DNA of 46,945 nucleotides from Perkinsus chesapeaki ATCC PRA-425. Its lineage: Eukaryota; Protista; Perkinsozoa. Of the stretch, positions 1 through 37,780 are shown piece by piece; position 1 is the stretch's first letter; every line of letters begins with the position of its first letter. A program made the translations under genes and the position numbers. The stretch spans positions 1-46,945 of the forward strand of contig JAAPAO010000250.1 in assembly GCA_013115145.1 (NCBI GenBank), written 5' to 3'. The notes beneath the pieces were generated by a model. The model did no database searches. It was given only the letters and a program-made list of their open reading frames with translations, and was not told where the DNA came from.

Positions 1-1552
1 GCTGGCATAGAACAGCGGTATTGGCGTAGCTGATGGACAAATCTTGAGGGGCGGCGTTGCTTCATGCAGGGTCTCACATAATCATCCCACGGCGGTGAAG
101 CATACTGGGCGGTCTATTACGATGCATTAAGGCACATATCCACAGGGCCACGTCCACACACATTATAACATCGGCTAAATACCGGCGCAATGTTTCAAGC
201 CACGGCACTTGAGTCGGTGACCTTGCTGTATGAACTCATCGGTCCAAGCTTCAGTCATGATGGCATCGAGATGCTCCAAAGTGGCTCCTTGCAAGCCATC
301 CCACAAAGCATCGTAGCTGACAATCACCGTCGGTGTAGGGATTGGGGGCGGTAGACACCTTCGCCGATCTTCCACTTGTAAGGTACCGTCAGATATTTTA
401 TCAGAAGTGACATGACGGAGCTTGGCGAAGTAAGTGCCGAGCGTTGCAGGACCTACGGGGGCTTCCGAGAGGTCAGCAGGTCTGCCATAGCCCCCACCTC
501 GGTGGGTCAGCCCCTCGAGCGCCATCGTGGCTGCTTCTACCACAAACTGCATGTGCTCGCTGATGGCGGCTAAACGTATGCCGCGAATATCTTCCTTGTG
601 CTTTTGAGGAGAGCAATGAGCGTCGGGCTTGGAAGATACAACTCGGAGTAGTCTGTCGGAGAGATACGGCTCACCATCAGAGGACCGTCTCTGGGTAAAG
701 CTTGTGCTGCACTCCAGGCATCGGACCTCTCGAAGGAGATCTGCCCTGGACTGTTGGCCAAAATGATCTGAGGGGACGTGAGGGGCAGCTGGGGAAATCA
801 AAGGCATCACTTCGAGATCGGCCGATGTGAAGGGGAACATCGATGCTTCGGAGGTGTCGGCGTCATTGCCCGGATACTGGATGTAGTGGGACAGTATCTT
901 GGTAACATAATGGCGACCTCGACAACAAAGCCAACCTATCTCACCTACATCTCGCCCGATCCTCTTCAACTCCTCCGCGTGGATATCATCGACCTCTGGA
1001 CTGGACAGAGTCTGACACAGTTGTCTTTGACAGTTGCAGCAATGACATGTGTTTTCCACCCATTTGATGAAGTTATATGTAGCAAACAGTACTCCTGTGA
1101 TGCAATGTGCTGTTGCGTTGTGCCGCAGCGGTGAGGGCGGCGGCGGTGGGGGCAGTTGCATAATACCAGCAATATGCAACTGATACCCAGTCTCCCGTAG
1201 CTCCTCGTTCTCTAAGCGGCGAGGCTTGCACCTTCAAGAATCGATCGATGAGCCCACCTATAGCTTCTATCACCACGCCCCGACTTAGACGGAGAGCGTG
1301 CGACAATTTATCAGAGTCCTCGGGATGGCTTCCAGCGTCTTCCACAATACGAAGGTAACTGCAAGTACAGGTTGGCCAGCGGGCACATTCATAGGCCGAC
1401 TCAGCCCAGGTCAGCTGTTCCTCCAGGCCAGGAAGCCACAGTGTAGAACAATCAAGAGCATCAGGCAGCACCCATCCGATAGCCAAGTGAGTTAGGAATA
1501 GGAAAACATATTGCGAAGAGAGAAAGGGGGGCAGCATAGAGAAGTCTACCAC
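1..1552 (-). mobile_element. Possible degenerate gag/LINE-ORF1-like retroelement relic (frameshifted ORFs 1073..1552 and 175..1179)
   Basis: Two long intron-free overlapping ORFs in an otherwise intron-dense window. Just past the 175 stop, in a shifted frame, are broken Cys-knuckle-like strings (RCYNVCGRG..DMC, RPVCFT, LKICP). No RT domain in the window; family assignment is inference. Confidence 0.3.
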
Positions 1553-1817
1553 TCAACCCATTGGGACTAAACACGCAACTCGATCACTGTGCAAGCCTAA
1601 AAATTCAAAGGCAAGTTAATGGTGACTAGAGAGATCTGAACGCTTGTGGTGTACAAGCCATCATGAAGATGGGAGAGCTTGAGATAGGGAGAGCTCAGAT
1701 CCTACGGCCGGATGCATAGACCGCAGGGCAAGGCCCCCAGTTGAAGAGGCGGTTGGAATAGCCGCATTGTCATGATAATGTACTGTTATGTAATGTACTT
1801 CTACCTAGTAGGTAGGA

Positions 1818-3827
1818 TTAGATCTTAGGGGATACTATCTGATGAGGAGAACAACCGCTGGATAAATAAACAAGATACGGCCGGAGAGTTACCAATTTGT
1901 TCTCAATTTCTCCCAAGAAGATAATCTCTCCCTGAGTCGGCAAGACGCATGCCACTTCCTGCGCAAACTTCGGTTTCTGTCCGAGTGCACACGAATACCT
2001 GCCAAATCCACGTAGACTCGTAGAGCACTAACAAGTGCAGCGGATACTTACTCGATTCCACCGATGAGAAGAGACACTCGACCGCTCTTGTGAACTCGAA
2101 GACTGCCGATTTTACCGTCGGGGACTTCGTTGAAGGTCGCAACCTCCGAGGCGGAACTGGAGATAGCTGAAATAGAGCAAACGGATATTGTATTGGGTTG
2201 CAGAGATGCAAAAGCATTTATGGATTATGGCCGAGCGCCATTTCATTCAACCACACGCTGGAATGGTCTAGTTGGTTATGACGACTGCCTAACACGCAGT
2301 AGGTCCCGAGTTCGATTCTCGGTTCCAGTATTTTTACGATATCTCACAACATCTGTCTCACCTTTATCCTTGCTTTTCTCGGCCTCCTCGTCATCCATTA
2401 TAACTCTAGGGAATGTGGTGGGCAGTTGCACCTACGAAATCTGCAATGAAGGCAACGGGTAGGACGGTGAATAAGAAAGCCCTGCCGGAGCCAATATCGC
2501 ACCACGAAGAATTGATCCTCTTTCACAGCGCTTCCTTCTTCTTCTGCTTGGGAAGTCATCTTGCGGTTCAAAAAAAGATGAGACGCACCACTTGATCTGA
2601 GATGACCAGATGCCTGCGTATCAAGGCTGCATTGCTAACTCCTGCTCTACGGTGGCAGCCGCTGCCTCAAGAAGGACTGGCCTTTTGCCCTTCGGTCTGT
2701 CGGTGGCGTGGGATGTCTCGGCACTGTAGCCGCTTGCTTGTAGTATATCAGGGGAAATGCGGAGGGTTGAGTAGTAGGGCACTGATAGAGGGGGGTATCT
2801 GAAGAGCAGTTGTGAAACCAGTGTGACGGGAATCACGACCTACTCCTGGATGTCATCAACAGCCGTGCCAAAGGCAACGTCATCGAGGGGCCTTTCTAGG
2901 AGAGGCCCAATACGCTTACGCTTCTCTTCTTTGAACTAAGTGTTATAACAATACGGAATGTCTAGTCGAGAACCGGATTACAGGGAAATCATCCTGGAGG
3001 ACATCCTTAGCTAAGCGCAGACCAGGAGCCGAAATTGACCGGCTTGAGGAGGAGACCGCTGTTACGCCTGAGCGAGAAACAGTGACATTTGGGAACCATT
3101 AAACAACACAGGTTGATATCCTAGACGACAGAAAAGGCTCATACAAGCTGATGACGAAAGACCATCCGTTCCTCACATTGACTGATTTGTACATTTAAAA
3201 AGAAGCGCCCGATGTGGATGGGTCCAAGCTCAGCACCAAACACTGCCTTACGTGTGTTGCCTTTCATCTTATCCTTCCGCTTTCTCTCAGCAGACTCCTT
3301 CATAGCATTCATCAGTATCACTTTAACACTGGTCGGCATCGGTTCCTCACCTTCGTCTCTTCTTGCCGCTGCCATCTCCCTAGCGACCTTCCCGATGGCC
3401 TTCGCCAGCATCGGTTCGTCACTTCCAACAGTGCGAGCATCAGGGCGCTTTGGAGCGAATTTAGACGAGGATAGCCCACTCGACTTGGGGCGGAAAGGTG
3501 ACCTGTGCAGGACAATTGAGCGATCGCCCTCTGAGGTCCTACTCGTTTCCACCGAACATTGAACGTGTCGACTCCCTTTTAAACGAAGCCAGCCTCTCTA
3601 CTGGTAGTATCGGACGCACTCTAACCTGACAGCCATCACCTAGTCCTTATTAGAATTAACGGTATTCCTACAGGCCCATGACGCGGACGCTGGTCCTGTG
3701 CAGGTGCCTCAATTTTTACCGATTTCCTCGTCGAGCTGGAGGAGGATATGGGTTCATTCGGCTCTGCAAACTTCCTAAGCCTTCGCTGCTTTGCAGGGCT
3801 CCCTCCCGGTTTGAGTGAAGATGACAT
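1818..3827 (-). CDS. POLR3D: RNA polymerase III subunit RPC4 (RPC53/POLR3D), multi-exon
   Basis: Hand-spliced 3' exons give VQLPTTFPRV...DK|AISSSASEVATFNEVPDGKIGSLRVHKSGRVSLLIGGIE|YSCALGQKPKFAQEVACVLPTQGEIIFLGEIENKL|IVSPKI*. This matches the RPC4 C-terminal domain pattern (QLP; GxIGxLxVxKSGxVxLxIG; FxQEV; LGxIxxKLxxSP). Phases are consistent at GT-AG introns 2167..2361 and the next two. Probable ATG at 3827 (MSSSLKPGG..RKFAEPN); middle exons not fully resolved. Confidence 0.82.
2257..2330 (+). tRNA. trnV-AAC: tRNA-Val(AAC)
   Basis: GCTGGAA/TTCCAGT acceptor stem, D arm GTCTAGTTGGTTATGAC, anticodon arm ACTGC-CT AAC AC-GCAGT (AAC at 2291-2293), T arm CCGAG-TTCGATT-CTCGG, followed by TTTTT. Confidence 0.96.
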
Positions 3828-4014
3828 GTCCAACCGAGTAGAGGACTAGTGAGAAGATGGAAGAGGTTTTCCTGGTCTTTGATGGTTAATAACGCAAACA
3901 AGTCGAATTTACCGATATCGTAACATCATATTCGTCATTGAAAGTAATGGTGATATGCAACATGAAATCCCTTTGGGAATGAATGCTTCCGTCGGCCTCA
4001 ACTCAGCTGGCGTC

Positions 4015-5564
4015 TCAACTCGCTGCTGCTCTATACAAAGAGGCTGTCAGCTGTAGTTCCTGAACAAACACGGCGACTTGAGGAATGCTACTAATATAGC
4101 AGCTCCGATGTAGTCTAGCTGGTTAGGATATCTGGCTTTCACCCAGACGACCCGGGTTCGAGTCCCGGCATCGGAAGTATTTTCATCACGCTCAATTTAA
4201 GTCCCGATTCAGTATAACCTCTATTCTTACCTTGAGTCGTCTATTCTTTTCGGCTTCCAATTGCTTCCTCTCGAACTCCATTGCAACTGATCTCTCCCAG
4301 GACCTAAAGCATCCGCCATGTTACGATAAGCTCCAATACTGCATAATATTCAGCTATTAATATCTCTACTCGCTACCTTTCACTTCGCTCTTTCATCGCA
4401 TCTTCCATTTCCTTGACCTTCAACAACTGTTTTATCTCCGCACGGTCCTCTCGCTGGTCAGCCCTAAGTGCTTCATCAGCCAAAGCCTAACACCAGCTCC
4501 AATTCAAACCAAAGCCAGTGCCGAGCCCACTCCCCACTCGTTCTCTTTCGGCGATTTCCCTTTGAATTGCCTTCTCTCGTCGCTCGTCATAACTTTTAGC
4601 ATGTTGTTCTAGCTCAGCTTTCTTGGCACGCATCTTCCTCTCACGCTTGAATCTCACCGACTCCAAGTTTTCCTGGGAAGTAAAAGATCGACAATAATAC
4701 TGTGTCACGTCGATAAGTGTATAAGACGTTCAACAAACGTTAGCTTCAAAAACTGAGTTGTAATCGAAGCTAAGCGTAGTATCGGAGACTTGATGACACA
4801 GCCAACCTCACCTTGAGCTCCCGGTCTTGTATCGATTTCCTATATGCTTCGATGCCCTCTCGCAGTTTAGTCTCGTGTTTCCTTCGCCATTCTGTAAGGT
4901 CCTTCTGGGCCTCATGTTCGATCCTCTTCTTGCTCAACTGCACACTAGACTCAATATCATCGCCCCTTCAACACGGCCGCACCTTCTCCTCCCTCCTCAT
5001 GTTCCACAGTATACGACTCTCCAGCGCCTTCAACTCCCGAATCTCCCGCCCTGAGCAATTCCCAGTCGTAACAGATAAAAATCTACAATCCCCGCGGGAG
5101 GCATACGTGTCTCCTCGAGAGTTCGCCGCCAGTTGTCCTCTTCTTTGCCGCGTATTTGACCCCTTGCCGAGAGCCTCACTGTCGAGCCTGGCGAAGCCAT
5201 GCGATCTTCAACAGAAGATTCACAGCGTTCCTTACTCCTCGCCGATAAAGGCCGACTGCTCCTAGGCGCCGAAGAAGCCCCAGAAGGTCGAGCCTTCCCC
5301 GGTAAGCTCAACCTTAAGGATGCAGCGGAGGCTGAGATACGGCGTGTCTGTGTGGATAAGGTGATGTATGCCTCACCTGTTGCCTTGGGAGCGGAGGAGG
5401 CAGTTCTGATTGCTGGTGACAGCGATCTTGCGCCAACCACCTTCGGCCGAGAGCCTACAAGATTTAATGTGATGGGGAATACAGATCTCCAAATACTTTC
5501 TTTTTTCGCTTCCTTAACGGACGAGCTCGGTGTAGGGGGATACGCAGCTGAGAAGTATCGATGA
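4015..5564 (-). CDS. Hypothetical coiled-coil protein, multi-exon (5' end may continue to ~7364)
   Basis: Charged helical exon peptides (GREIRELKALESRILWNMRREEK, KRIEHEAQKDLTEWRRKHETKLREG, LEAEKNRRLK|ELQLTASLYRAAAS*). Last intron 4060..4230 has GTAAGA...CAG in phase 0. Confidence 0.6.
4104..4176 (+). tRNA. trnE-TTC: tRNA-Glu(TTC)
   Basis: TCCGATG/CATCGGA acceptor stem, anticodon arm TCTGG-CT TTC AC-CCAGA (TTC at 4138-4140), T arm CCGGG-TTCGAGT-CCCGG, TTTT a few nt downstream. Confidence 0.96.
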
Positions 5565-5688
5565 GGAAACCACGAGTCTTTTAGTAGACCCTACAAGCCT
5601 TGGCAGACTTCAGCGAAGTCTCAGTACTCTTGCTGACGCCTTCAGACGATAGTGCTCCCTTGGTTGAGCCCGACCTGAACAAGTCCTA

Positions 5689-7364
5689 CTAACCGACCGT
5701 GCCTATGCGCACTCTACCCCTGTGGACGGCCCTGAGCCACTGGCTTTGCTTTAGCACTGCCGGGTGTAGCCATCTGCTGCCGATCGCTAGGAGGAGGTGA
5801 ACGTCTCGATAGGGGAGTGAACCCTGTGAGCCGCCACAAGGTACCACAGACCATCGAGGGTTCGAGCTCACCGGAGGCCGCCTTCTTGGTGTGTTTATGA
5901 GTCTTTGCAGGGGAAGCAGGTGGTGCTGTATCCCTAGTTGTGGAGGAGGAGGAGACCTTCCTCTGTCCCGGAATGCCAAGGACCGTACTTGTTATTCGGA
6001 CAGAGGCCGCTGAAGCAGGAAGTAATATCGCACCGCTGACGAGTAAATTCACCAAAGACAATTCACGAAAATTGAATTCGTTCTCATGTTCTAATACAAA
6101 CGACAGAAATTCAAGTAGATTGTGAATCTCCGCGAGTTCTCTATCAAACGAGACCAATATTTCACTGTGTCATTTTGTATACGGTGTTTCCCACCGAATC
6201 ACTGCTTACGTTGGAGCTTCTCTGTTCCCGGCTTAGTCTGTCTTCGGCCACGAGATGACGCTGAAGGGCTCGAGAAAGGCTGGGAAGCAAGGAAATGCTC
6301 AACAGGTAGGGTTCTCGTCACGTCACCTTAGAACAGCCCGCTCGTTTGTCCCCACTAGCGAGGCAATAACCCACAACATGGCTCAGCCAACGGGCCAGTG
6401 CCTTACTAGCAACAAAGGTACCAGAAACAATCTAAAAACAAGGTTCACCCTAGAAGACAAGGGAACTCCTAACCTCGTTTTGAAAGGGTGCTGTATCGAC
6501 CAGAGCCGCCAATAAGCGGACTGTCTTGTCTGACACCTTGTCCTTATCAAAGAAAACCAATTTCTGTAGTAGGCTACTCGCACTGGTGGTAGCAAACACA
6601 TGCTCACGGGCAGCCTTCCAGTACTCTTGTGGCGCTGATGAGAACCAAGTCGGTGCATTTAACGGAAGCTTCTCACCGTCCGAGCTCCCAACAATACCAC
6701 CAGTGCTGCTCCTCCTCTTGGGTTTGATGCCCAATGCCAGACAGATGCCTCGAGCTACTGACAAAACCCCTTCTGGTGGCGATGGAAGGTTGCGCAGTTC
6801 GGCAAAATCGCCTGAACAGGAGTCTCTTCGCTCCGCTGCTGCCCGTTAATTTCTCACGCCTTGTCAGAGTGCTGAGTGCGGCCATGGCTTCTTCGACGGT
6901 AACATACTTACCCATCTGCTCCCTCGTTTCATCTCGCTCCTAGGAGAACAGAAAATGGCACAACTCGCCTTGGTCCCCGGTTCCATCCCGGCAGCGGGCA
7001 TTTTTCCAACCAGACCCACCTCTTGGATCTTATCCTTCTGGAAGTCCCCAACCGGATGCTGCTCCGGTACATAAGAGTTGATAATTGACCCAAGCGAGCT
7101 AAGTAGGGATAATACAGCTAGAGGTGTCAGAATGAATCGGCACTACTTTCTATCGAGGACTGGGCTCAATGTCTGTATGAACTGAGGCGAATCCGGGACG
7201 TCAACTGCCTCAGTTGTCGCTGCAATGTGTTCTGCTGACTGCTGCATTAGTATGCGTAATTGCGACTGCAGTGAGCCGGATTTGTATTGGGTAACACGAT
7301 ACGAGGAGACACAGTCACACATTGACGGGATAATGTTCAACAACAATGGCATGCTATCGCCCAT
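5689..7364 (-). CDS. Hypothetical multi-exon protein with a dynein-heavy-chain stalk/MTBD-like segment
   Basis: ORF fragments 6673..6915, 6450..6764 and 5714..6157. The peptide YWKAAREHV..SLLQKLVFFDKDKV SDKTVRLLAALVDTAPF resembles the dynein stalk-head pattern W..AK..L....FL..L..FDKD.I. No AAA motifs seen. May join the downstream coiled-coil gene. Confidence 0.4.
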
Positions 7365-23601: not shown

Positions 23602-25238
23602 ATGTCGGAGCTCGATAACTCGCCACAGTCCGAGGAGAATGAGGAAACATCTGAAGCAGGGTCACTGCTTGACATCATCTCCAATGGAAAAGAGGAATCT
23701 TCAAGCGAGGTTGATGATGGTGATGAGTACAATGAAGAAGAGGATGATGATGACTATGATGATTCTGGAAGTGGGTTCACATTTACTAATTCATATTATA
23801 GACATACAGTACTCGATTTATACGGCAACTTACTAACACATAAGAAGGACTTAAGCATTCTCGGCCTTGGACTATAAGCTCACATAGGCGTCATGCCGAA
23901 CGCGAACGGTTTGACAGTCGATTTATTTCAGAATAAAATGCGTAACCTAGACGATGGATACTGTTACAGTGTTACTGTTGTTCATGGATAGTCCGTAGCT
24001 ATTAAGAGCTATTGTATGACAGGCTCCTCTGGAGAATATACCGGCAGTGTATCAAGCGATAGGTCAGCATCATCATCTTCAACAGGAAAAGAGGAGCTAG
24101 CTGAAGCCTTTGCTGGTGCACAGGAGGCGGAGAACACCATCAAGGAGGCTGGTAGAGCGGAAACTCATCGGAGTGCCCACTACCACCTCTTCAGAGCGTG
24201 CGCTGTCCACGGCGTTAGAGAGGCTTCGTGCCATGCAAGAACGAGCGGTCACTGCAGAGGAAACCTTGGACAAGTTCAAAACAGAAATGGAAAATGTGAC
24301 CTCTAAAATATCTTAGGTCTCAGAGCTAAGATATGTTTAGGAACGCTTGGACCGGGAACGGGAGACCCAGGGTCACTTGGAGGAACTTCGGAAGGCGAGA
24401 GAGGCTGAGGAGAGGGCGCGAGCAGAGGTAAGTGAATCCCCAGTGAGAACCCAGTAAAGTGTTTCAGGTGGAGGAGTTGGCAGCTTCACAGAAGTCATCT
24501 GGTGACGCTGAAGAAGATAAGCGCAACGCAGAAGTGCTGCGTCGGCGAGTGGAGGAATGGGAGGCTTGGTGAGCGGAAGGGGGTACACGAGTGGGGAGAA
24601 GCGGCGCTGTGGTTTTAGGTACCGCCAGAACTATGAGCATTCCTTAGGAGTGGTACAGACCAAGATTGAAAGTTTAAAGGCCACCTGGGACAAGTCGCTC
24701 CGAGATCTAGGGGGGAGCTCGCTGGCAGATCTCGAAAGGGTGATGGAAGATGCCCGAAGGTCGGTGCTGTTATGAGGCGGTACGACTGTTATCCTCCAAT
24801 GTAGATCGGAGAAGCTGATGGCTGGAAGACACGGTCGAAGAGTGACGGATTCGGAGGCATGCCTGGCGACTCTCAATGACTTCAAAATGCAACTGGTTTT
24901 GCGGTGAGCTCATTTCCCTGTCACTTATAAAAGGAGCGGTATCGGCTGTTGCTCTTCAGGCATGGAAGCTTGACAAAGGCATGGAGTCGCAGTCTCGATG
25001 TGGAAGGGGAAGGCAGGATACCTTTCACCAAGTTCTGTCGAACGGCCCGAGAGGTTAGTGGACTAGTGTCATATTACTTGTAGTTCTCTGTGAATGCCAC
25101 CACTGCTGATGGCCACTGGTCAGTCGTTATTGGTAGTGTTGTGTAAACTCAAAGCGTGACATGCAGAGGTTCACGGGTTTTGTGGTTAAGGAGTGCCGTT
25201 TGGGAAACAACAAGATTAGGATCGAACTCGAGTGCTAA
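23602..25238 (+). CDS. Hypothetical acidic/coiled-coil protein, multi-exon
   Basis: Acidic start MSELDNSPQSEE. Exon peptides ERALSTALERLRAMQERAVTAEETLDKFK and IESLKATWDKSLRDL, GT-AG boundaries, TAA at 25236-25238. Confidence 0.5.
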
Positions 25239-25285
25239 GCGAACCTTCTTCGTGAACCTTTCGTCGGATTGATGATATCGCAGAA

Positions 25286-25358
25286 TAGTCCCGGCGAGGG
25301 TCGAACTCACGACCTATGGCTCATAAGACCATCGCTCTAACCACTGAGCTACAGGACC
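25286..25358 (-). tRNA. trnI-TAT: tRNA-Ile(TAT), identical to 18784..18856
   Basis: Reverse complement is 73/73 identical to the + strand copy. Confidence 0.95.
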
Positions 25359-25399
25359 AACTATTATATTAAGTTAACAATATTTCAGTGCATCTTTCA

Positions 25400-27622
25400 C
25401 TAAGTGTTTCCAAGTGATTAAATTGAGCCGCGGACTGTCGTACTAGCGGGCTATCTCAGATCGGCCATCCCTCGGACCACTCAAACTCATCAACTAGTAT
25501 CATGACCCTACCCATCACTCCCGCTTTTAGATTGGATTCGCCGGCAGTGTTCAACAACTATGGCGTCAGTTAGACTTCCGAAAGACGGGCTTCATTAGCC
25601 TCTCCTCTCTTGATGAGGTATCCGGCCACAAGGTTCAACGCTTCCGCCAAGCTCTTATTGACAAGTAAGCGCTCGAGCTCCCCGGGTTCTCACGATTGTC
25701 GCGCAGGTTTGGAAGCTTGCCAGAGGGCTGGGGCGCCGCCTTGGATACCACTGCGGCTGGCGTAGTTGAGACATCCCAGTTTTCTCAGCGTTGCCGTGAA
25801 AGCCTTGAAATGAGTGATGGAAGGTATGATGCTGTGTTAGGTTACAGCGATGTTGATGATCTATAATGTAGGGAGATAGCTTCCGTACTGGACCTGGAGA
25901 AGAGCGGGGTGGTGACACTAGAGGACCTGGACCCTCCGGCATTCGAAAAATGGTTGCGTGATCCTGCTGTTGGTCGGGCCTCGGTAAGAGCACTGTAGTA
26001 CCAAATTTCCTATAGATGTGCATTTGTCAGGGACGTGTACCCTTTAAGCTTTTCCAGCGATTGGCACGGCATAGTCGGATCGACCCAGCGGAAATGAAGC
26101 CCGAAGCCTTCTCTCCGTCCAGGGGCCCTATCAAGCTGTTGGCTCAGCTACGAAGAGACTACGGTATCCACTAAACGGTCATCAAAGGTCTCAGTGTTCA
26201 TCAGGCACTCTCGGCCGAGCCTGGTCTACGGTCATCGACCCTCAAGCCCGAGGGTGCATCCCGTTTCTCGAGTTTGCCAGATTCTATCGAGCAGTGGGTC
26301 AGAGGGGGCCGGTTAAGAAACTGTGGCTGCGACTCGGAGGTAGGGACTGTGCGAGGCGCTGATGTTAAGATTCCTTGTACTCAGCGGGGGCTGGACCACT
26401 CCGACTTGAACATATCGACCCCGACGCTGCAGCTCTGATAGAAGATTTCAAAGGAGCTCTCCGACGGACAACAGGCTCCCTGGGGACCGCGGTAAGCGAG
26501 GAAACGCCTACCAATTGATGAAGTGCCTTGCCTTAGTGGCGCAAAATTATCGATCCCAAGGAGATCGGTAGAGTGACATGGGTGCAGTGGCACCAAACTC
26601 TGCGTCCTGCTCGGGGCAGTTGCTCTCTCCCAGCCAGATTTAACGATGCGGAGGTCAGACTGCCATGCGGAATGCTATAATGAATCCATCAGATTCGTGA
26701 ACTTTTTAACCTGTTTGACCCGGAAGGGTGCGGCTATATAACTCTCGAAGATGTGGACCGTGAAGAGTTCCAGGACGGCATTCGATCGAGGCAGCCTTCC
26801 TTCAGTAAGGGGACATAATCGCCAATGGCAACTGTTAGCGCTCTCGGCAGGTGTTCAGGCCTCCGACTACCACGCAAAAACTGTCAATTTCTTGTCTGCG
26901 ACTTCGATTTCCCCACCACTGGCCCTCGACGATGAGCACGAGATGTACCCAGTTGAGATCTTAAAACATATTTTGATAGAGAAGTTCGGCAGTGTTGCGA
27001 GGGTATCGTGCTGCTCATCAACTTAGCAGCTTTTGAGCGGACTTCTTTTATTAGGCCTGGATACAATGCCTCGACAGCAGCGGTGCAATGAAGGTGGAAT
27101 ATCTTCCCTTCTGTGGGGTATTGACCGCACTTGGGTTCCCAGGTAGGGTATATGGATCGCCTGAGCTATCAGAGAGGTTACTCAGGCAAACTCAAGCAAT
27201 TGTGGGTGGACATAGGGGAGCTTAAAGACGCCAGCATCTGTCTACAAGCTGTTGATCCGGGGGTCACGCGTCGACCTAAGATACGTCGCCGAGCTCTCTT
27301 GTGGTTTCAGGCTTTTGAACTCATCATGAGATTCCGGCAAGGTGTCCGAATAAAGCATGGGCTTCTCGCGAAGGCGGTAGGTCGCTCCTAATGGTATGTA
27401 CCCACATGTTCCCCTCAGTGGGCCGCATGCCTCAACCCAGATGATCAGGGCCGAGTCAGCCCGGATGTATTTGTCGATCAGTGTGCTAGTTCTGAGCTCC
27501 TCGACAACTTCAATGCATCTGATGCTAACCTACTCCTTGGTATGTTGCGCTTGGACAGCACTGAGAGCCTCGCCATCACGGAAGTAGCCGTGACCTCCTA
27601 CTGCCCCGGTGATGAGCGCTAA
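25400..27622 (+). CDS. EF-hand-like repeat protein, multi-exon (ends approximate)
   Basis: Repeated units GFAGSVQQLWRQLDFRKTGFISLSSLDE, FNLFDPEGCGYITLEDVD, ILIEKFGSVAR|AW..CLD, LWVDIGELKDASICLQAVDP. Confidence 0.5.
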
Positions 27623-27745
27623 TTCCTCTCAGTTGGACCCTCGAGCGATGGACTCCTTCAAAGAGTGGCGACAAAAGCTTCAAGGCTGACATGTTCAACC
27701 ATTTATCAACAACCGTTGTGCGTCAGGGAGTTGTCGAGTTTAAAG

Positions 27746-35059: not shown

Positions 35060-37780
35060 TCATGACATGGTGACAGTGAACACATCTCTTAATCGCAAGA
35101 GTACCTTCTGTGTTATTGGTGACCTGTTTGTGCTGCTCTCTGTCTTCGCCGCCTGCATTATCGTAGCATCACCGGTGGTCTTAAGTAGCTCGCTGACGTT
35201 CTTAGCTGTCACGTTGCCTGACATACGGCTAAATGACGGAGAGCTCCATCCACTGCCACCTTACCCATGCGTTTTTCGGTGATCTCCAACAAAGCCTTAG
35301 TGGCTTCAGCGCCGCATCCCGGAACCTGAAGGCTCCTGAAGGTCATTTAATGCCTTCCAGCTTTTACCTGTCTGACCATCGCTCCAGTAAGATCTCGGAC
35401 TGTTATGCCGACTGTCTTCGCACACGATGATCCGAATGCGTCGTACGTAGTGGAGTTATCTACAAAAGAGGTTTGGTGTTCCAACACAATGCATTTTACT
35501 CTCTTCGATTGTGCCTCCTTGTTGGCAGACTGCGCGGTGCATTTCAGCAAGCAGCCGAGCAGAGTGTCGAACCGATGCCGTTGTGATGGCCTGGATGATG
35601 ACGCTGCCTACTGTCAACCGTAGAAGTTGCCCACTCCGAATCCTCCAATTATTCTACTGTTGCAGAGAGCGCTGCGAAGGGTCGCGCTCGGCAGCGTTCT
35701 CATTCCACCGTGGCTGCGCTCCACATCGCCTTCTATGACGTAAAATATTCGGTTCAATGCGGTGGCCCTGAGGAACGACGAAATGATCATAAAGCCCACA
35801 GGATGAACCGGTATAGATTTTATATACTCAATTGCACTTCATAAAACAGCAAGGCGAGGGTAAGGGAGGAGCTTACGAAAGCGAAGAGCTATCGGCTATC
35901 CGGCGCATACAGGACCAATGACTGGGTTGAGTGTAAAGAAGACTCTATTATTATAACACGTTTAAAGAGGAGGCGATATGGAATATACCCTACTTGGACG
36001 CCAGGCGGTATTTCTGTTCATCATAGCGGCCATCGATTATTGAAGCACTCAAATCCTGCCAAGTCTTCCTCTCACCACCGATACCCATGATGAGCTCTCT
36101 TCCATCAGATGGTCTTTTCATCAACTGAATTGGCGGTGCATCACCACTGACCGGCAAGTGTGGGTATGCTTACCCACAGGAAGTCTGTAATTGGCAAGCT
36201 CCTTGACTCGACGTGAACACCCAGAGAAGTTAGCTCTTTTATTAAGGAACTTTCACGGACGTCCACAACCAGAACGGGCTCCCATGGACCGGATGGGATC
36301 ACAGCCGGTAGAGGGTCCTGTACAGGGTTCGGAAGTGGTTGCGTACCGGCATAGCGGAACTCGTCTAGATCTTTCTCGGGTACGGGAGCTCCGGTGTAGG
36401 AGAGTCTCCGGCGCCTCCTCGTATCAGAAGATTCGGTCCCTGTTGCAGTGCACCGTATAGAGCCGAGAGCTGCCAGCGGGAACTCGACAGAGGCCAGGAT
36501 GCGTTGGCCGAGGCTAAGCCCGGTGTCAGTGAGACGGTACTCTTTATCGACAGAAGAGTCCTAAAGTTCGATCCTCAGCTTGATTGCCGTATTGATTGGT
36601 TACAGATATTGTAAGCAGCTCTCGCTTTTCCAGGGATTTGAGTGTGGTAGTGCTGACTGTTATAGAAGTTGGAGATGCGCCTGCATCGTGGTCATCATTT
36701 GAGAAAGAACGAGCGACATGTTGAATGGAGGAGCAGCAAGCCTGAAGCTTGAACGTTGTGGCTGAAGGATTGTCAGTTTTACAGTTAGTTGTTTTCGGGT
36801 CAGACCTTCTTGATTTTCTCCAGTGAGTCCGTTGTAGCAAAGCTGCAGAGCGAGCAAGATACACCACTGGACGCTACCTGCAGTAGAACACCAGCATCTC
36901 AAGCGGCTGTGTGGTCTAGTGGTATGATTCGCGCTTCGGGTGCGCGAGGTCCCGGGTTCGATTCTCGGCTCAGCCCTTATCGTGTATATGCCGACACCAT
37001 AAGAGGGAATGCGGCCTGCCTGGTCTCCCAGACCTCATGGTGTCACCAAGATTATTCCCAACTGATACTCGGTGGAGCCTCTGTATACCACTCCACCCAC
37101 GTCACCAGTAGCCGGGCGATATTCTCTTTGCTTTCGTCTTGGTTGCTCCGCTGAGGCGTCTTCGGAACCCTCAGTAACATCAGTGCTAACAGTCGGAGCA
37201 TCACGCAGGAATTTCTCCGCTCGATTCCTGTCGAGAAGTGATCGTGCCAAAATGCGCCGATGATGTCTCACTTGATTGTTTTTCTCCATGTTAGCGATGA
37301 CCGTCTCGGTGAGGCAGAAGCCTCTTTTTCGGCAATGACTTGAGCGAAAACCTGACAGAGCTTCGACAGGAGTCGAGAAACTAAACTGTTTCACCTGGGC
37401 AAATGTACTGCCAACACCATCTAGCTGCTCAGCCTGCCACCCAGTGGTAATAGGCATTGGGTACCTGTAGTATCAAAGAAGCCCTTGAGCACTCAGACCT
37501 CACGCGCTTCGAAGGCATCCCTATCGAATTGTGAGAGATTTCGGACAAACCACAAGTTCTGAGTTAGAACTTCTGACTGTCTGAAATCTGCCAGGGCCAC
37601 GCCGACTTGGCTTCTTCCGTAAGATATTCGACAAAGCAGCTACTTCGTTAATGCTCTGATGATCCTTCCGTAAGATCGGACCAAATTAGTCTGACCTCTA
37701 CTCCTCGCGGAATCTCGTAATTCCTGAAATTTAACCATGAACATTTGATTCTCCGGATGGCAGGATGATGATGAAGTCAT
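35060..37780 (-). CDS. MUS81: Crossover junction endonuclease MUS81, multi-exon
   Basis: N-terminal HhH (RDSARSRG..SYGRIIRALTK|YPMPITTGWQAEQLDGVG); WH domain (EYRPATG|SVQWCILLAL); ERCC4 nuclease (LVVDVRE, VESRSLPITDFLW, ERKTWQDLSASIIDGRYDEQKYRL, RIFYVIEG); C-terminal HhH2 (KTVGITVRDLTGAMVRQV, PGCGAEATKALL). Confidence 0.93.
36905..36976 (+). tRNA. trnP-CGG: tRNA-Pro(CGG)
   Basis: GGCTGTG/CTCAGCC acceptor stem (one T-T mismatch), GTCTAGTGGTATGAT D arm, CGCGC-TT CGG GT-GCGCG anticodon arm (CGG at 36937-36939), CCGGG-TTCGATT-CTCGG T arm. Confidence 0.9.

What the first reader, a model, noticed from the sequence alone, without database searches (positions are those of the whole stretch)
2167..2361. 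A Pol III-transcribed tRNA sits antisense inside an intron of the Pol III subunit gene RPC4: candidate autoregulatory circuit
Seen: an intact tRNA-Val(AAC) on + (2257..2330, with a TTTTT terminator) lies within a 195-nt GT-AG intron of a minus-strand gene whose neighbouring introns are ~55 nt. The spliced flanking exons read DK|AISS..GKIGSLRVHKSGRV, the RPC4/RPC53 signature. Established: RPC4 and RPC5 form the TFIIF-like termination/reinitiation heterodimer of Pol III, and in mammals the RPC5 gene Polr3e is modulated by an antisense Pol III-transcribed MIR in its intron through transcriptional interference. Inference: this would be an independent version using a real tRNA in the partner subunit, so that Pol III activity feeds back on synthesis or splicing of its own subunit.
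Basis: partly seen in the sequence, partly recalled or inferred. Interest (0 to 1): 0.85.

Follow-up and report, generated by a model that had tools for sequence, protein, structure and literature searches.

The report
tRNA gene nested in RPC4 intron
An intact valine tRNA gene really does sit backwards inside a spliced intron of the RNA polymerase III subunit gene RPC4 in the shellfish parasite Perkinsus chesapeaki, but such nesting is commonplace in this tRNA-rich, gene-dense genome and the tRNA has decayed in a sister species, so it is most likely an ordinary nested gene, not a purpose-built feedback switch.

Summary
tRNA-Val(AAC) lies at 2257-2330 (+) with a T5 run at 2331-2335, inside a 195-nt GT-AG intron (2167-2361) of a minus-strand gene. 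An RNA contig shows the intron spliced out at exactly these ends. The host is RPC4 (Pfam PF05132, 82 bits; matches yeast and human RPC4 chains in PDB).

The organism is Perkinsus chesapeaki. The same tRNA, 74/74 identical, sits in the orthologous intron in three P. olseni assemblies. In P. marinus it is a decayed relic that no tRNA model recognises.

The autoregulation idea is weakened by three points:
- P. marinus keeps RPC4 without the tRNA.
- On this same contig a tRNA-Ile lies antisense in an intron of an unrelated EF-hand gene and is equally conserved in P. olseni.
- The contig carries 5 tRNA genes and at least 6 tRNA relics in 47 kb, and about 70% of non-coding DNA in the annotated part is intron.

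The scan's other readers noted antisense tRNA genes and relics in introns on many other contigs of this genome.

One new item: a spliced-leader-capped, polyadenylated RNA starts exactly at this intron's 3' splice site. So some crosstalk between the tRNA gene and the host transcript is possible but unproven.

Verdict: new member of a known kind, modest interest.

The parts
2257..2330 (+). tRNA-Val(AAC) gene, intact cloverleaf with internal A and B boxes
   Evidence: ARAGORN. Rfam RF00005 at 64.5 bits. It is 74/74 identical in P. olseni L008, L006 and L003.
2331..2335 (+). T5 run, the Pol III terminator directly after the tRNA
   Evidence: Read from the sequence.
2167..2361 (-). 195-nt GT-AG spliceosomal intron of RPC4 that contains the antisense tRNA
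   Evidence: RNA contig X2 record 6 joins 2166|2362 with no mismatches. The orthologous intron is 204 nt in P. olseni (L008 11508-11711) and about 172 nt in P. marinus.
2362..2427 (-). RPC4 exon upstream of the intron (...VQLPTTFPRVIMDDEEAEKSKDK)
   Evidence: RNA contigs X1 and X2. Matches PF05132 profile positions 7-36.
2052..2166 (-). RPC4 exon downstream of the intron (AISSS...GKIGSLRVHKSGRVSLLIGGIE)
   Evidence: RNA contigs X2 and X4. PF05132 at 35.7 bits, profile positions 60-97.
1592..3827 (-). RPC4 gene from the conserved start codon (ATG at 3827-3825) to the poly(A) site near 1592, with stop codon TAA at 1820-1818
   Evidence: PF05132 at 82.1 bits. PDB RPC4 chains. P. olseni gene models begin at the same MSS... 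start. The poly(A) tail is seen in X4 record 9.
2166..2168 (-). 3' splice site that is also used as a spliced-leader trans-splice acceptor
   Evidence: X4 record 9 carries 22 non-genomic letters that match the dinoflagellate/Perkinsus spliced leader. They are joined exactly at the exon start and the RNA runs on to a poly(A) tail. There is no SL-like sequence in the window. SL sequences are given in PMC3101222.
4104..4176 (+). tRNA-Glu(TTC) gene 277 bp upstream of the RPC4 start codon, antisense to RPC4 and to the upstream gene
   Evidence: ARAGORN and Rfam at 67.7 bits. Found at the same place in P. olseni L003, L006, L008 and L009. It is a decayed relic in P. marinus.

Best explanation
This is an ordinary, functional tRNA-Val(AAC) gene nested antisense in an intron of RPC4. 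Pol III transcribes it from its internal A and B boxes and stops at the adjacent T5 run. The host pre-mRNA is transcribed across it by Pol II and the intron is removed normally.

The arrangement was inherited from the common ancestor of P. chesapeaki, P. olseni and P. marinus. The tRNA is kept by selection on its own function as a tRNA. That the host is a Pol III subunit is coincidence, in a genome where genes are tightly packed, tRNA genes are very numerous, and introns are the main non-coding space available.

Any damping of RPC4 transcription by head-on Pol II/Pol III encounters would be a by-product, not a selected circuit.

Shown: the tRNA, the intron, its splicing, the host identity, the state in orthologues, and the control locus. 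Inferred: that the tRNA is expressed, and that the pairing with RPC4 is coincidental.
For: - The tRNA is intact and the intron is spliced.
- The tRNA is 74/74 identical between P. chesapeaki and P. olseni. The intron flanks are 50-57% identical, at the level of shuffled sequence, and the flanking exons are only 62-64% identical. Selection therefore acts on the tRNA itself.
- In P. marinus both the Val and the Glu tRNAs are decayed: 75-82% identity, broken stems, and the B box mutated in one scaffold. No tRNA call is made, yet RPC4 remains.
- Control: tRNA-Ile(TAT) at 25285-25359 lies antisense inside an EF-hand gene and is conserved between orthologous exons in P. olseni.
- The window carries 5 tRNA genes and at least 6 B-box relics in 47 kb.
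- Annotated genes span about 85% of the first 17 kb, and about 70% of the non-coding sequence there is annotated intron.
- P. marinus has more than 500 copies of just five tRNA families (PMC3706591).
- In C. elegans 44% of tRNA genes are intronic, as expected by chance (PMC4999229).
Against: - Two antisense tRNA genes (Glu upstream, Val in an intron) bracket most of RPC4 and both are conserved in P. olseni.
- A spliced-leader-capped RNA begins exactly at this intron's acceptor, which hints that the tRNA perturbs the host transcription unit.
- Yeast TFIIIB/tDNA complexes are strong Pol II roadblocks (PMC5052057), so some effect on RPC4 output is physically likely.
Confidence: 0.7

Rival explanations
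1. Selected autoregulatory circuit. Pol III and TFIIIB/TFIIIC occupancy of the antisense tRNA-Val, and perhaps of the upstream tRNA-Glu, blocks or slows Pol II on RPC4. High Pol III activity would then lower synthesis of its own subunit, as the antisense MIR does for mouse Polr3e.
For: - The geometry matches Polr3e/MIR (PMC5358760).
- The tRNA is intact and conserved in position in P. chesapeaki and in three P. olseni assemblies.
- A second antisense tRNA is conserved 277 bp upstream of the start codon.
- A tDNA roadblock to Pol II is established in yeast.
Against: - Both tRNAs have decayed in P. marinus while RPC4 persists.
- An unrelated gene shows the same conserved antisense intronic tRNA.
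- The base rate of tRNA genes and relics in introns is very high.
- The full-length spliced message exists.
- There are no occupancy or perturbation data.
Confidence: 0.1
2. Incidental splitting of the transcription unit. The nucleosome-free, factor-bound tRNA gene acts as a roadblock and/or a cryptic divergent Pol II start site inside the intron. Some transcripts then lack the upstream 5' splice site, and the intron's acceptor receives the spliced leader instead. The result is a non-coding 3' fragment of RPC4 mRNA. This is a side effect with no regulatory role.
For: - X4 record 9 reads spliced leader, then exon 2166..., then the last two exons, then poly(A), with no mismatches.
- This RNA has no in-frame ATG (from the sequence).
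- The region upstream of the tRNA's 5' end faces the downstream RPC4 exons.
- There is no SL-like sequence in the window.
Against: - The evidence is a single contig at depth about 3 from an RT-PCR 454 metatranscriptome that may have been SL-primed.
- Low-level SL addition at internal acceptors may occur at any intron.
- It was not quantified against cis-splicing, and no tRNA-free long intron was examined as a control.
Confidence: 0.15
3. The tRNA copy is itself silent or a recent pseudogene, kept identical only by gene conversion with other family members. The intron merely stores it.
For: - P. olseni short contigs break inside or at the tRNA, so it is a multi-copy repeat.
- The acceptor stem starts with a G-U pair.
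- P. marinus shows that this locus can decay.
Against: - It has perfect tRNA model scores, intact A and B boxes and a terminator.
- It is identical across species whose neutral DNA is saturated.
Confidence: 0.05

Closest known systems
Antisense MIR (a Pol III-transcribed SINE) in the first intron of mammalian Polr3e (RPC5), acting by transcriptional interference (Yeganeh et al. 2017, PMC5358760)
   Same: A Pol III-transcribed unit lies antisense in an intron of a gene for a Pol III subunit. RPC4 is the heterodimer partner of RPC5. The position is conserved among some related species.
   Different: Here the element is a genuine tRNA gene, not a SINE, and it sits in a late intron, not the first. 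It has decayed in one congener. There is no occupancy, Pol II pile-up or deletion evidence, and the genome is full of similar nestings in unrelated genes.
Intronic tRNA genes of Caenorhabditis (Sagi et al. 2016, PMC4999229)
   Same: A large share of tRNA genes lie in introns of protein-coding genes, on either strand. The host/tRNA pairing is conserved between species, and the intronic fraction matches chance expectation.
   Different: The lineage is different (Perkinsozoa). Typical introns are much shorter (about 45-70 nt), so a tRNA roughly triples intron size. No effect of the host promoter on the tRNA was tested here.
tDNA/TFIIIB roadblocks and insulators for Pol II in budding yeast (Roy et al. 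2016, PMC5052057)
   Same: These provide the physical mechanism by which an occupied tRNA gene would hinder Pol II passing through, and by which the upstream tRNA-Glu could shield RPC4 from read-through.
   Different: Yeast tDNAs are intergenic, and no Pol II read-through was seen there. Here full-length spliced RPC4 mRNA shows that Pol II does get through.
tRNA-tail (B-box) relics in short Perkinsus introns, noted repeatedly by this scan on other contigs (AI notes, e.g. s1-218087, s1-230254)
   Same: Same genome, same theme of tRNA-derived sequence inside introns. The P. marinus orthologue of this intron is such a relic.
   Different: This locus holds a complete, intact gene in two species. 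It therefore shows the intact-to-relic path at one orthologous site. In P. marinus the B box is not specially preserved: it is mutated in one of the two scaffolds.

Membership tests
tRNA gene (Pol III type 2 promoter) | Cloverleaf that matches the tRNA covariance model, with an anticodon loop | tested here: met
   ARAGORN calls Val(AAC). Rfam RF00005 scores 64.5 bits against a 29-bit gathering threshold, covering model positions 1-71.
tRNA gene (Pol III type 2 promoter) | Internal A box and B box, and a downstream T-run terminator | tested here: met
   A box TGGTCTAGTTGG, B box GTTCGATTC, and T5 at 2331-2335.
tRNA gene (Pol III type 2 promoter) | Actually transcribed and processed into mature tRNA | not testable with these tools
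   The available runs are assembled cDNA contigs, which do not show small RNAs. The only support is indirect: 74/74 identity across species.
RPC4 / Rpc53 / POLR3D | C-terminal RNA_pol_Rpc4 domain (PF05132) above the curated threshold | tested here: met
   82.1 bits against a 26.5-bit cut-off, profile positions 1-143. The exon-by-exon hits are collinear.
RPC4 / Rpc53 / POLR3D | Sequence similarity to RPC4 chains in solved Pol III structures | tested here: met
   Yeast 5fj8_N and 7z0h_N at E about 2e-8, human 7a6h_N at E 1e-7.
Spliceosomal GT-AG intron | Removed from mRNA at exactly these borders | tested here: met
   Joint 2166|2362, 195 nt skipped, CT..AC on the + strand, no mismatches.
Polr3e-type Pol III-on-Pol II interference circuit | A Pol III unit lies antisense within an intron of a Pol III subunit gene | tested here: met
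Polr3e-type Pol III-on-Pol II interference circuit | The active element is conserved across the lineage | tested here: inconclusive
   The tRNA is intact in P. chesapeaki and in three P. olseni assemblies. It is a decayed relic in both P. marinus scaffolds. An unrelated host gene shows the same degree of conservation.
Polr3e-type Pol III-on-Pol II interference circuit | Pol III occupancy, Pol II accumulation upstream of the element, and host mRNA rising when the element is removed | not testable with these tools
   No ChIP, NET-seq or genetic data were available. The only hint is one SL-capped truncated RNA.

The most novel reading that the evidence does not exclude
RPC4 in P. chesapeaki and P. 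olseni is bracketed by two conserved head-on tRNA genes. Pol III occupancy of the intronic tRNA-Val would divert part of RPC4 transcription into a non-coding, spliced-leader-capped 3' fragment. The ratio of full-length to truncated message would then report Pol III activity back onto the synthesis of its own subunit. This would be an independent, tRNA-based counterpart of the Polr3e/MIR loop, using trans-splicing as the read-out, and it would have been lost in P. marinus.
Probability: 0.1. Interest if true: 0.7.

Novelty: new member of a known kind. Interest (0 to 1): 0.3.

Why it matters
If the pairing were functional, it would be a second, independently evolved case of Pol III regulating one of its own subunits through transcriptional interference, in a protist that uses spliced-leader trans-splicing.

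On the evidence here it is better seen as a clean, RNA-verified example of how Perkinsus stores its very numerous tRNA genes in introns. It also gives a rare orthologous series: the gene is intact in two species and a decaying relic in a third. That series supports in-situ decay of intronic tRNA genes as the source of the many tRNA-tail relics seen in this genome's introns.

It also flags systematic gene-model fusions across tRNA-containing spacers in the public Perkinsus annotations.

Tried and rejected
1. I wrote a script that looked for GT..AG pairs enclosing each tRNA or relic with open reading frames on both sides, to decide intron status without annotation. It 'found' an enclosing intron at 298 of 300 random positions, so I discarded it.

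2. Looking up the 452-aa ORF at 18953-20308 as an exact product found nothing. A homology search was needed to reach the deposited 713-aa model.

3. Pfam scans of the open frames flanking tRNA-Pro (36905) gave nothing usable. That tRNA's context stays undetermined.

4. The 'genome contigs' collection holds prokaryotes only, so I did not use it. Orthologous loci came from exact-protein look-ups instead.

5. RNA runs indexed for this stretch are tiny 454 sets of about 5 Mb. They settled the splice junctions but cannot measure expression, tRNA transcription or isoform ratios.

6. I considered that the Pfam hit might be spurious because the deposited model is a 1041-aa fusion. I rejected this: the RPC4 part alone scores 82 bits, and P. 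olseni models start at the same conserved Met.

7. I considered independent insertion of the tRNA in each species. I rejected this because position and orientation are the same and a full-length relic is present in P. marinus.

Full report
**Observation**

ARAGORN finds five tRNA genes in the window, one of them tRNA-Val(AAC) at 2257-2330 on the + strand. Rfam's tRNA model scores it 64.5 bits against a threshold of 29. The sequence shows a normal A box, a B box (GTTCGATTC) and TTTTT at 2331-2335 directly after the discriminator base.

**Host gene and intron**

The exons on the minus strand match Pfam RNA_pol_Rpc4 (PF05132) collinearly:
- exon 2362-2427 matches profile positions 7-36,
- exon 2052-2166 matches positions 60-97 at 35.7 bits,
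- the next exon matches positions 101-138.

The RPC4 part of the deposited protein (P0001:690-1041) scores 82.1 bits over the whole profile. It also hits yeast Rpc53 and human POLR3D chains of solved Pol III structures.

Laying four small RNA runs on 1500-5500 gave spliced contigs with no mismatches. One joins 2166 to 2362, skipping exactly 195 nt with GT..AG ends on the minus strand. The intron is therefore real and is removed.

The same call verifies introns of 54, 53, 71, 43, 46 and 184 nt in this gene and a poly(A) site near 1592. The claim that neighbouring introns are about 55 nt is thus only partly true. The 184-nt intron (3067-3250) has no tRNA-like content.

**Organism and orthologues**

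The window is the whole contig JAAPAO010000250.1 of GCA_013115145.1. A protein it encodes is named by NCBI as Perkinsus chesapeaki.

In P. olseni, three assemblies carry the same arrangement:
- L008 holds the complete orthologous intron (204 nt) with a tRNA-Val(AAC) that is 74/74 identical, antisense.
- L006 and L003 are short contigs that end at or inside that tRNA.

The intron flanks are only 50-57% identical, which is the level of shuffled sequence. The flanking exons are 62-64% identical. Selection, or homogenisation, therefore acts on the tRNA itself.

In P. marinus, on two scaffolds (L001 and L004), ARAGORN finds no tRNA. Rfam finds no tRNA match even at E<=10. The orthologous intron holds a recognisable relic:
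- It is 75-82% identical to the intact tRNA.
- The anticodon, T and acceptor stems are broken.
- The B box is intact in one scaffold and mutated at the invariant A58 position in the other.

RPC4 of P. olseni and P. marinus are closer to each other (about 70% in ungapped blocks) than either is to the window (61% and 50%). P. chesapeaki is therefore the outgroup. The tRNA-in-intron state is ancestral, and P. marinus lost it.

**A second tRNA at the same gene**

tRNA-Glu(TTC) at 4104-4176 (+) lies 277 bp upstream of the RPC4 start codon. It is antisense to RPC4 and to the upstream coiled-coil gene, whose unspliced reading frame stops 16 nt from it. It is present at the same place in four P. olseni assemblies. 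In P. marinus it is again a decayed relic.

The deposited models fuse the neighbouring gene to RPC4 across this spacer in P. chesapeaki and P. marinus and even more widely in one P. olseni assembly. Other P. olseni models start at the conserved MSS... methionine. I read the fusions as annotation artefacts.

**Base rate and control**

The window holds 5 tRNA genes and at least 6 orphan tRNA 3'-tail relics with perfect B boxes in 47 kb. In the annotated first 17 kb, genes span about 85% of the sequence and about 70% of the non-coding DNA is annotated intron. An intron is therefore the default home for a tRNA gene here.

With the annotation of 8953-31845:
- tRNA-Ile at 18784 is intergenic.
- tRNA-Ile at 25285-25359 (-) lies inside an EF-hand gene (23602-27689, +), antisense. 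No + frame is open across it.

In P. olseni the same tRNA-Ile lies between the orthologous exons. The tRNA is 97% identical and the exons 70-76%. An unrelated host gene therefore shows exactly the kind of conservation seen at RPC4. That removes conservation as an argument for a Pol III-specific circuit.

Supporting context from the literature and the scan:
- P. marinus has more than 500 copies of only five tRNA families (PMC3706591).
- In C. elegans 44% of 609 tRNA genes are intronic, as chance predicts, and host pairings are conserved (PMC4999229).
- Other readers and follow-up agents of this scan noted antisense tRNA genes and tRNA-tail relics in introns on many other contigs of this genome. 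Those are unchecked AI notes, but they agree with what I verified in this window.

As a rough inference: if a few per cent of genes host a tRNA, and about 25 genes would have prompted the same story, then about one such coincidence is expected.

**A new observation at the site**

One contig (run X4, record 9, 506 nt, depth about 3, no mismatches) has this structure:
- It starts with 22 letters that are not in the window. They match the dinoflagellate/Perkinsus spliced leader (SL sequences in PMC3101222).
- These letters are joined exactly at the 3' splice site of the tRNA-bearing intron.
- The contig continues through the last two verified introns to a poly(A) tail.

This is a mature, 5'-truncated RPC4 RNA. 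It has no in-frame ATG and so is presumably non-coding. It shows that some transcripts reach this acceptor without a usable upstream donor. Possible causes are:
- Pol II starting inside the intron next to the tRNA's upstream region,
- a roadblock or cleavage at the tRNA,
- simple competition of trans- with cis-splicing in an unusually long intron.

It is a single low-depth contig from an RT-PCR 454 metatranscriptome that may have been SL-primed. There is no tRNA-free control, so I treat it as a lead only.

**Mechanism and ranking**

Most likely (about 0.7): a functional tRNA gene is nested in an intron, kept for its own sake, with RPC4 as a coincidental host. Any interference would be a by-product.

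Rivals:
- incidental splitting of the transcription unit by the tRNA gene, without regulatory use (about 0.15);
- a selected negative feedback like Polr3e/MIR (about 0.1);
- a silent copy kept by gene conversion (about 0.05).

The yeast evidence that TFIIIB-bound tDNAs stop Pol II (PMC5052057) makes some physical effect plausible. Against that, the full-length spliced mRNA shows read-through, and P. marinus shows the tRNA is dispensable.

**Comparison and novelty**

The anatomy resembles Polr3e/MIR (PMC5358760). The features that define that circuit as a circuit are occupancy, Pol II pile-up and the effect of deletion. None is testable here, and lineage-wide conservation is not met in P. marinus.

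The locus fits the known class of intronic tRNA genes. I rate it a new member of a known kind, with interest about 0.3. Its main value is as an orthologous intact-to-relic series for the genome-wide tRNA-in-intron phenomenon, and for the spliced-leader lead.

Noticed in passing
window 4104-4176 (+): tRNA-Glu(TTC) lies 277 bp upstream of the RPC4 start codon and 16 nt beyond the unspliced stop of the upstream coiled-coil gene, antisense to both. It is conserved in four P. olseni assemblies and decayed in P. marinus. It may act as a Pol II roadblock or insulator between the two genes.
   Followed up: partly
window 18784-18856 (+) and 25285-25359 (-): Two near-identical tRNA-Ile(TAT) genes lie in inverted orientation 6.4 kb apart. 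One is intergenic and absent at the matching place in P. olseni L009. The other is antisense in an EF-hand gene intron and conserved in P. olseni. Dada DNA transposons of P. marinus are reported to target tRNA-Ile (PMC3706591). No transposase domain was found in the ORFs between the two genes.
   Followed up: partly
window 15300 (+), 15973, 16522, 17098, 27767 (-), 32096 (+): Six orphan tRNA 3'-tail relics, each a T arm with a perfect B box, some with an acceptor strand and a T run. Four of them lie inside one 781-aa gene (13475-18663, -), mostly in sense orientation.
   Followed up: partly
window 1818-7247 (-); L004 10001-12852; L008 10001-14008; L009 1-9686: Public gene models fuse RPC4 with its upstream and/or downstream neighbours, giving models of 1041, 471, 736 and 1962 aa. 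In P. chesapeaki and P. marinus the spacer holding the tRNA-Glu gene or its relic is treated as an intron. The models disagree between assemblies, so these are probably annotation artefacts.
   Followed up: partly
window 2782 joined to about 3802 (run X2, record 6): The RNA contig continues from 2782 into 16 letters that match exon 1 (3802-3817). That skips about 1 kb without GT-AG ends, and the two sites share microhomology. It is probably a reverse-transcriptase template switch or a chimera.
   Followed up: no
window 2640-2704, 2868-2905, 3302-3448 (runs X1, X3): Beside the perfectly matching contigs, the same runs hold contigs 88-95% identical to RPC4 exons. This points to a second haplotype, a paralogue or a closely related strain in those samples.
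   Followed up: no
L003 and L006 (whole contigs, 2.2 kb): Two P. olseni contigs begin about 100 nt before the tRNA-Glu gene and end inside or at tRNA-Val. These assemblies break at tRNA genes, which behave as repeats.
   Followed up: no
L008 17647-18327 (-): P. olseni has a tight cluster Ile(TAT)-Val(TAC)-Ile(TAT)-Val(TAC) about 3.6 kb beyond the RPC4-containing gene model. The P. chesapeaki contig ends before the matching place.
   Followed up: no
window 36905-36976 (+): tRNA-Pro(CGG) is flanked by long open frames on the minus strand (109 and 145 codons). It may be a third antisense intronic tRNA, but I could not obtain the annotation for this part of the contig.
   Followed up: partly
L001/L004 (P. 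marinus) against window and L008/L009: About 20 kb of syntenic P. marinus sequence, on two scaffolds, holds no intact tRNA gene. The P. chesapeaki and P. olseni regions hold several. P. marinus seems to have lost tRNA genes from this neighbourhood.
   Followed up: partly
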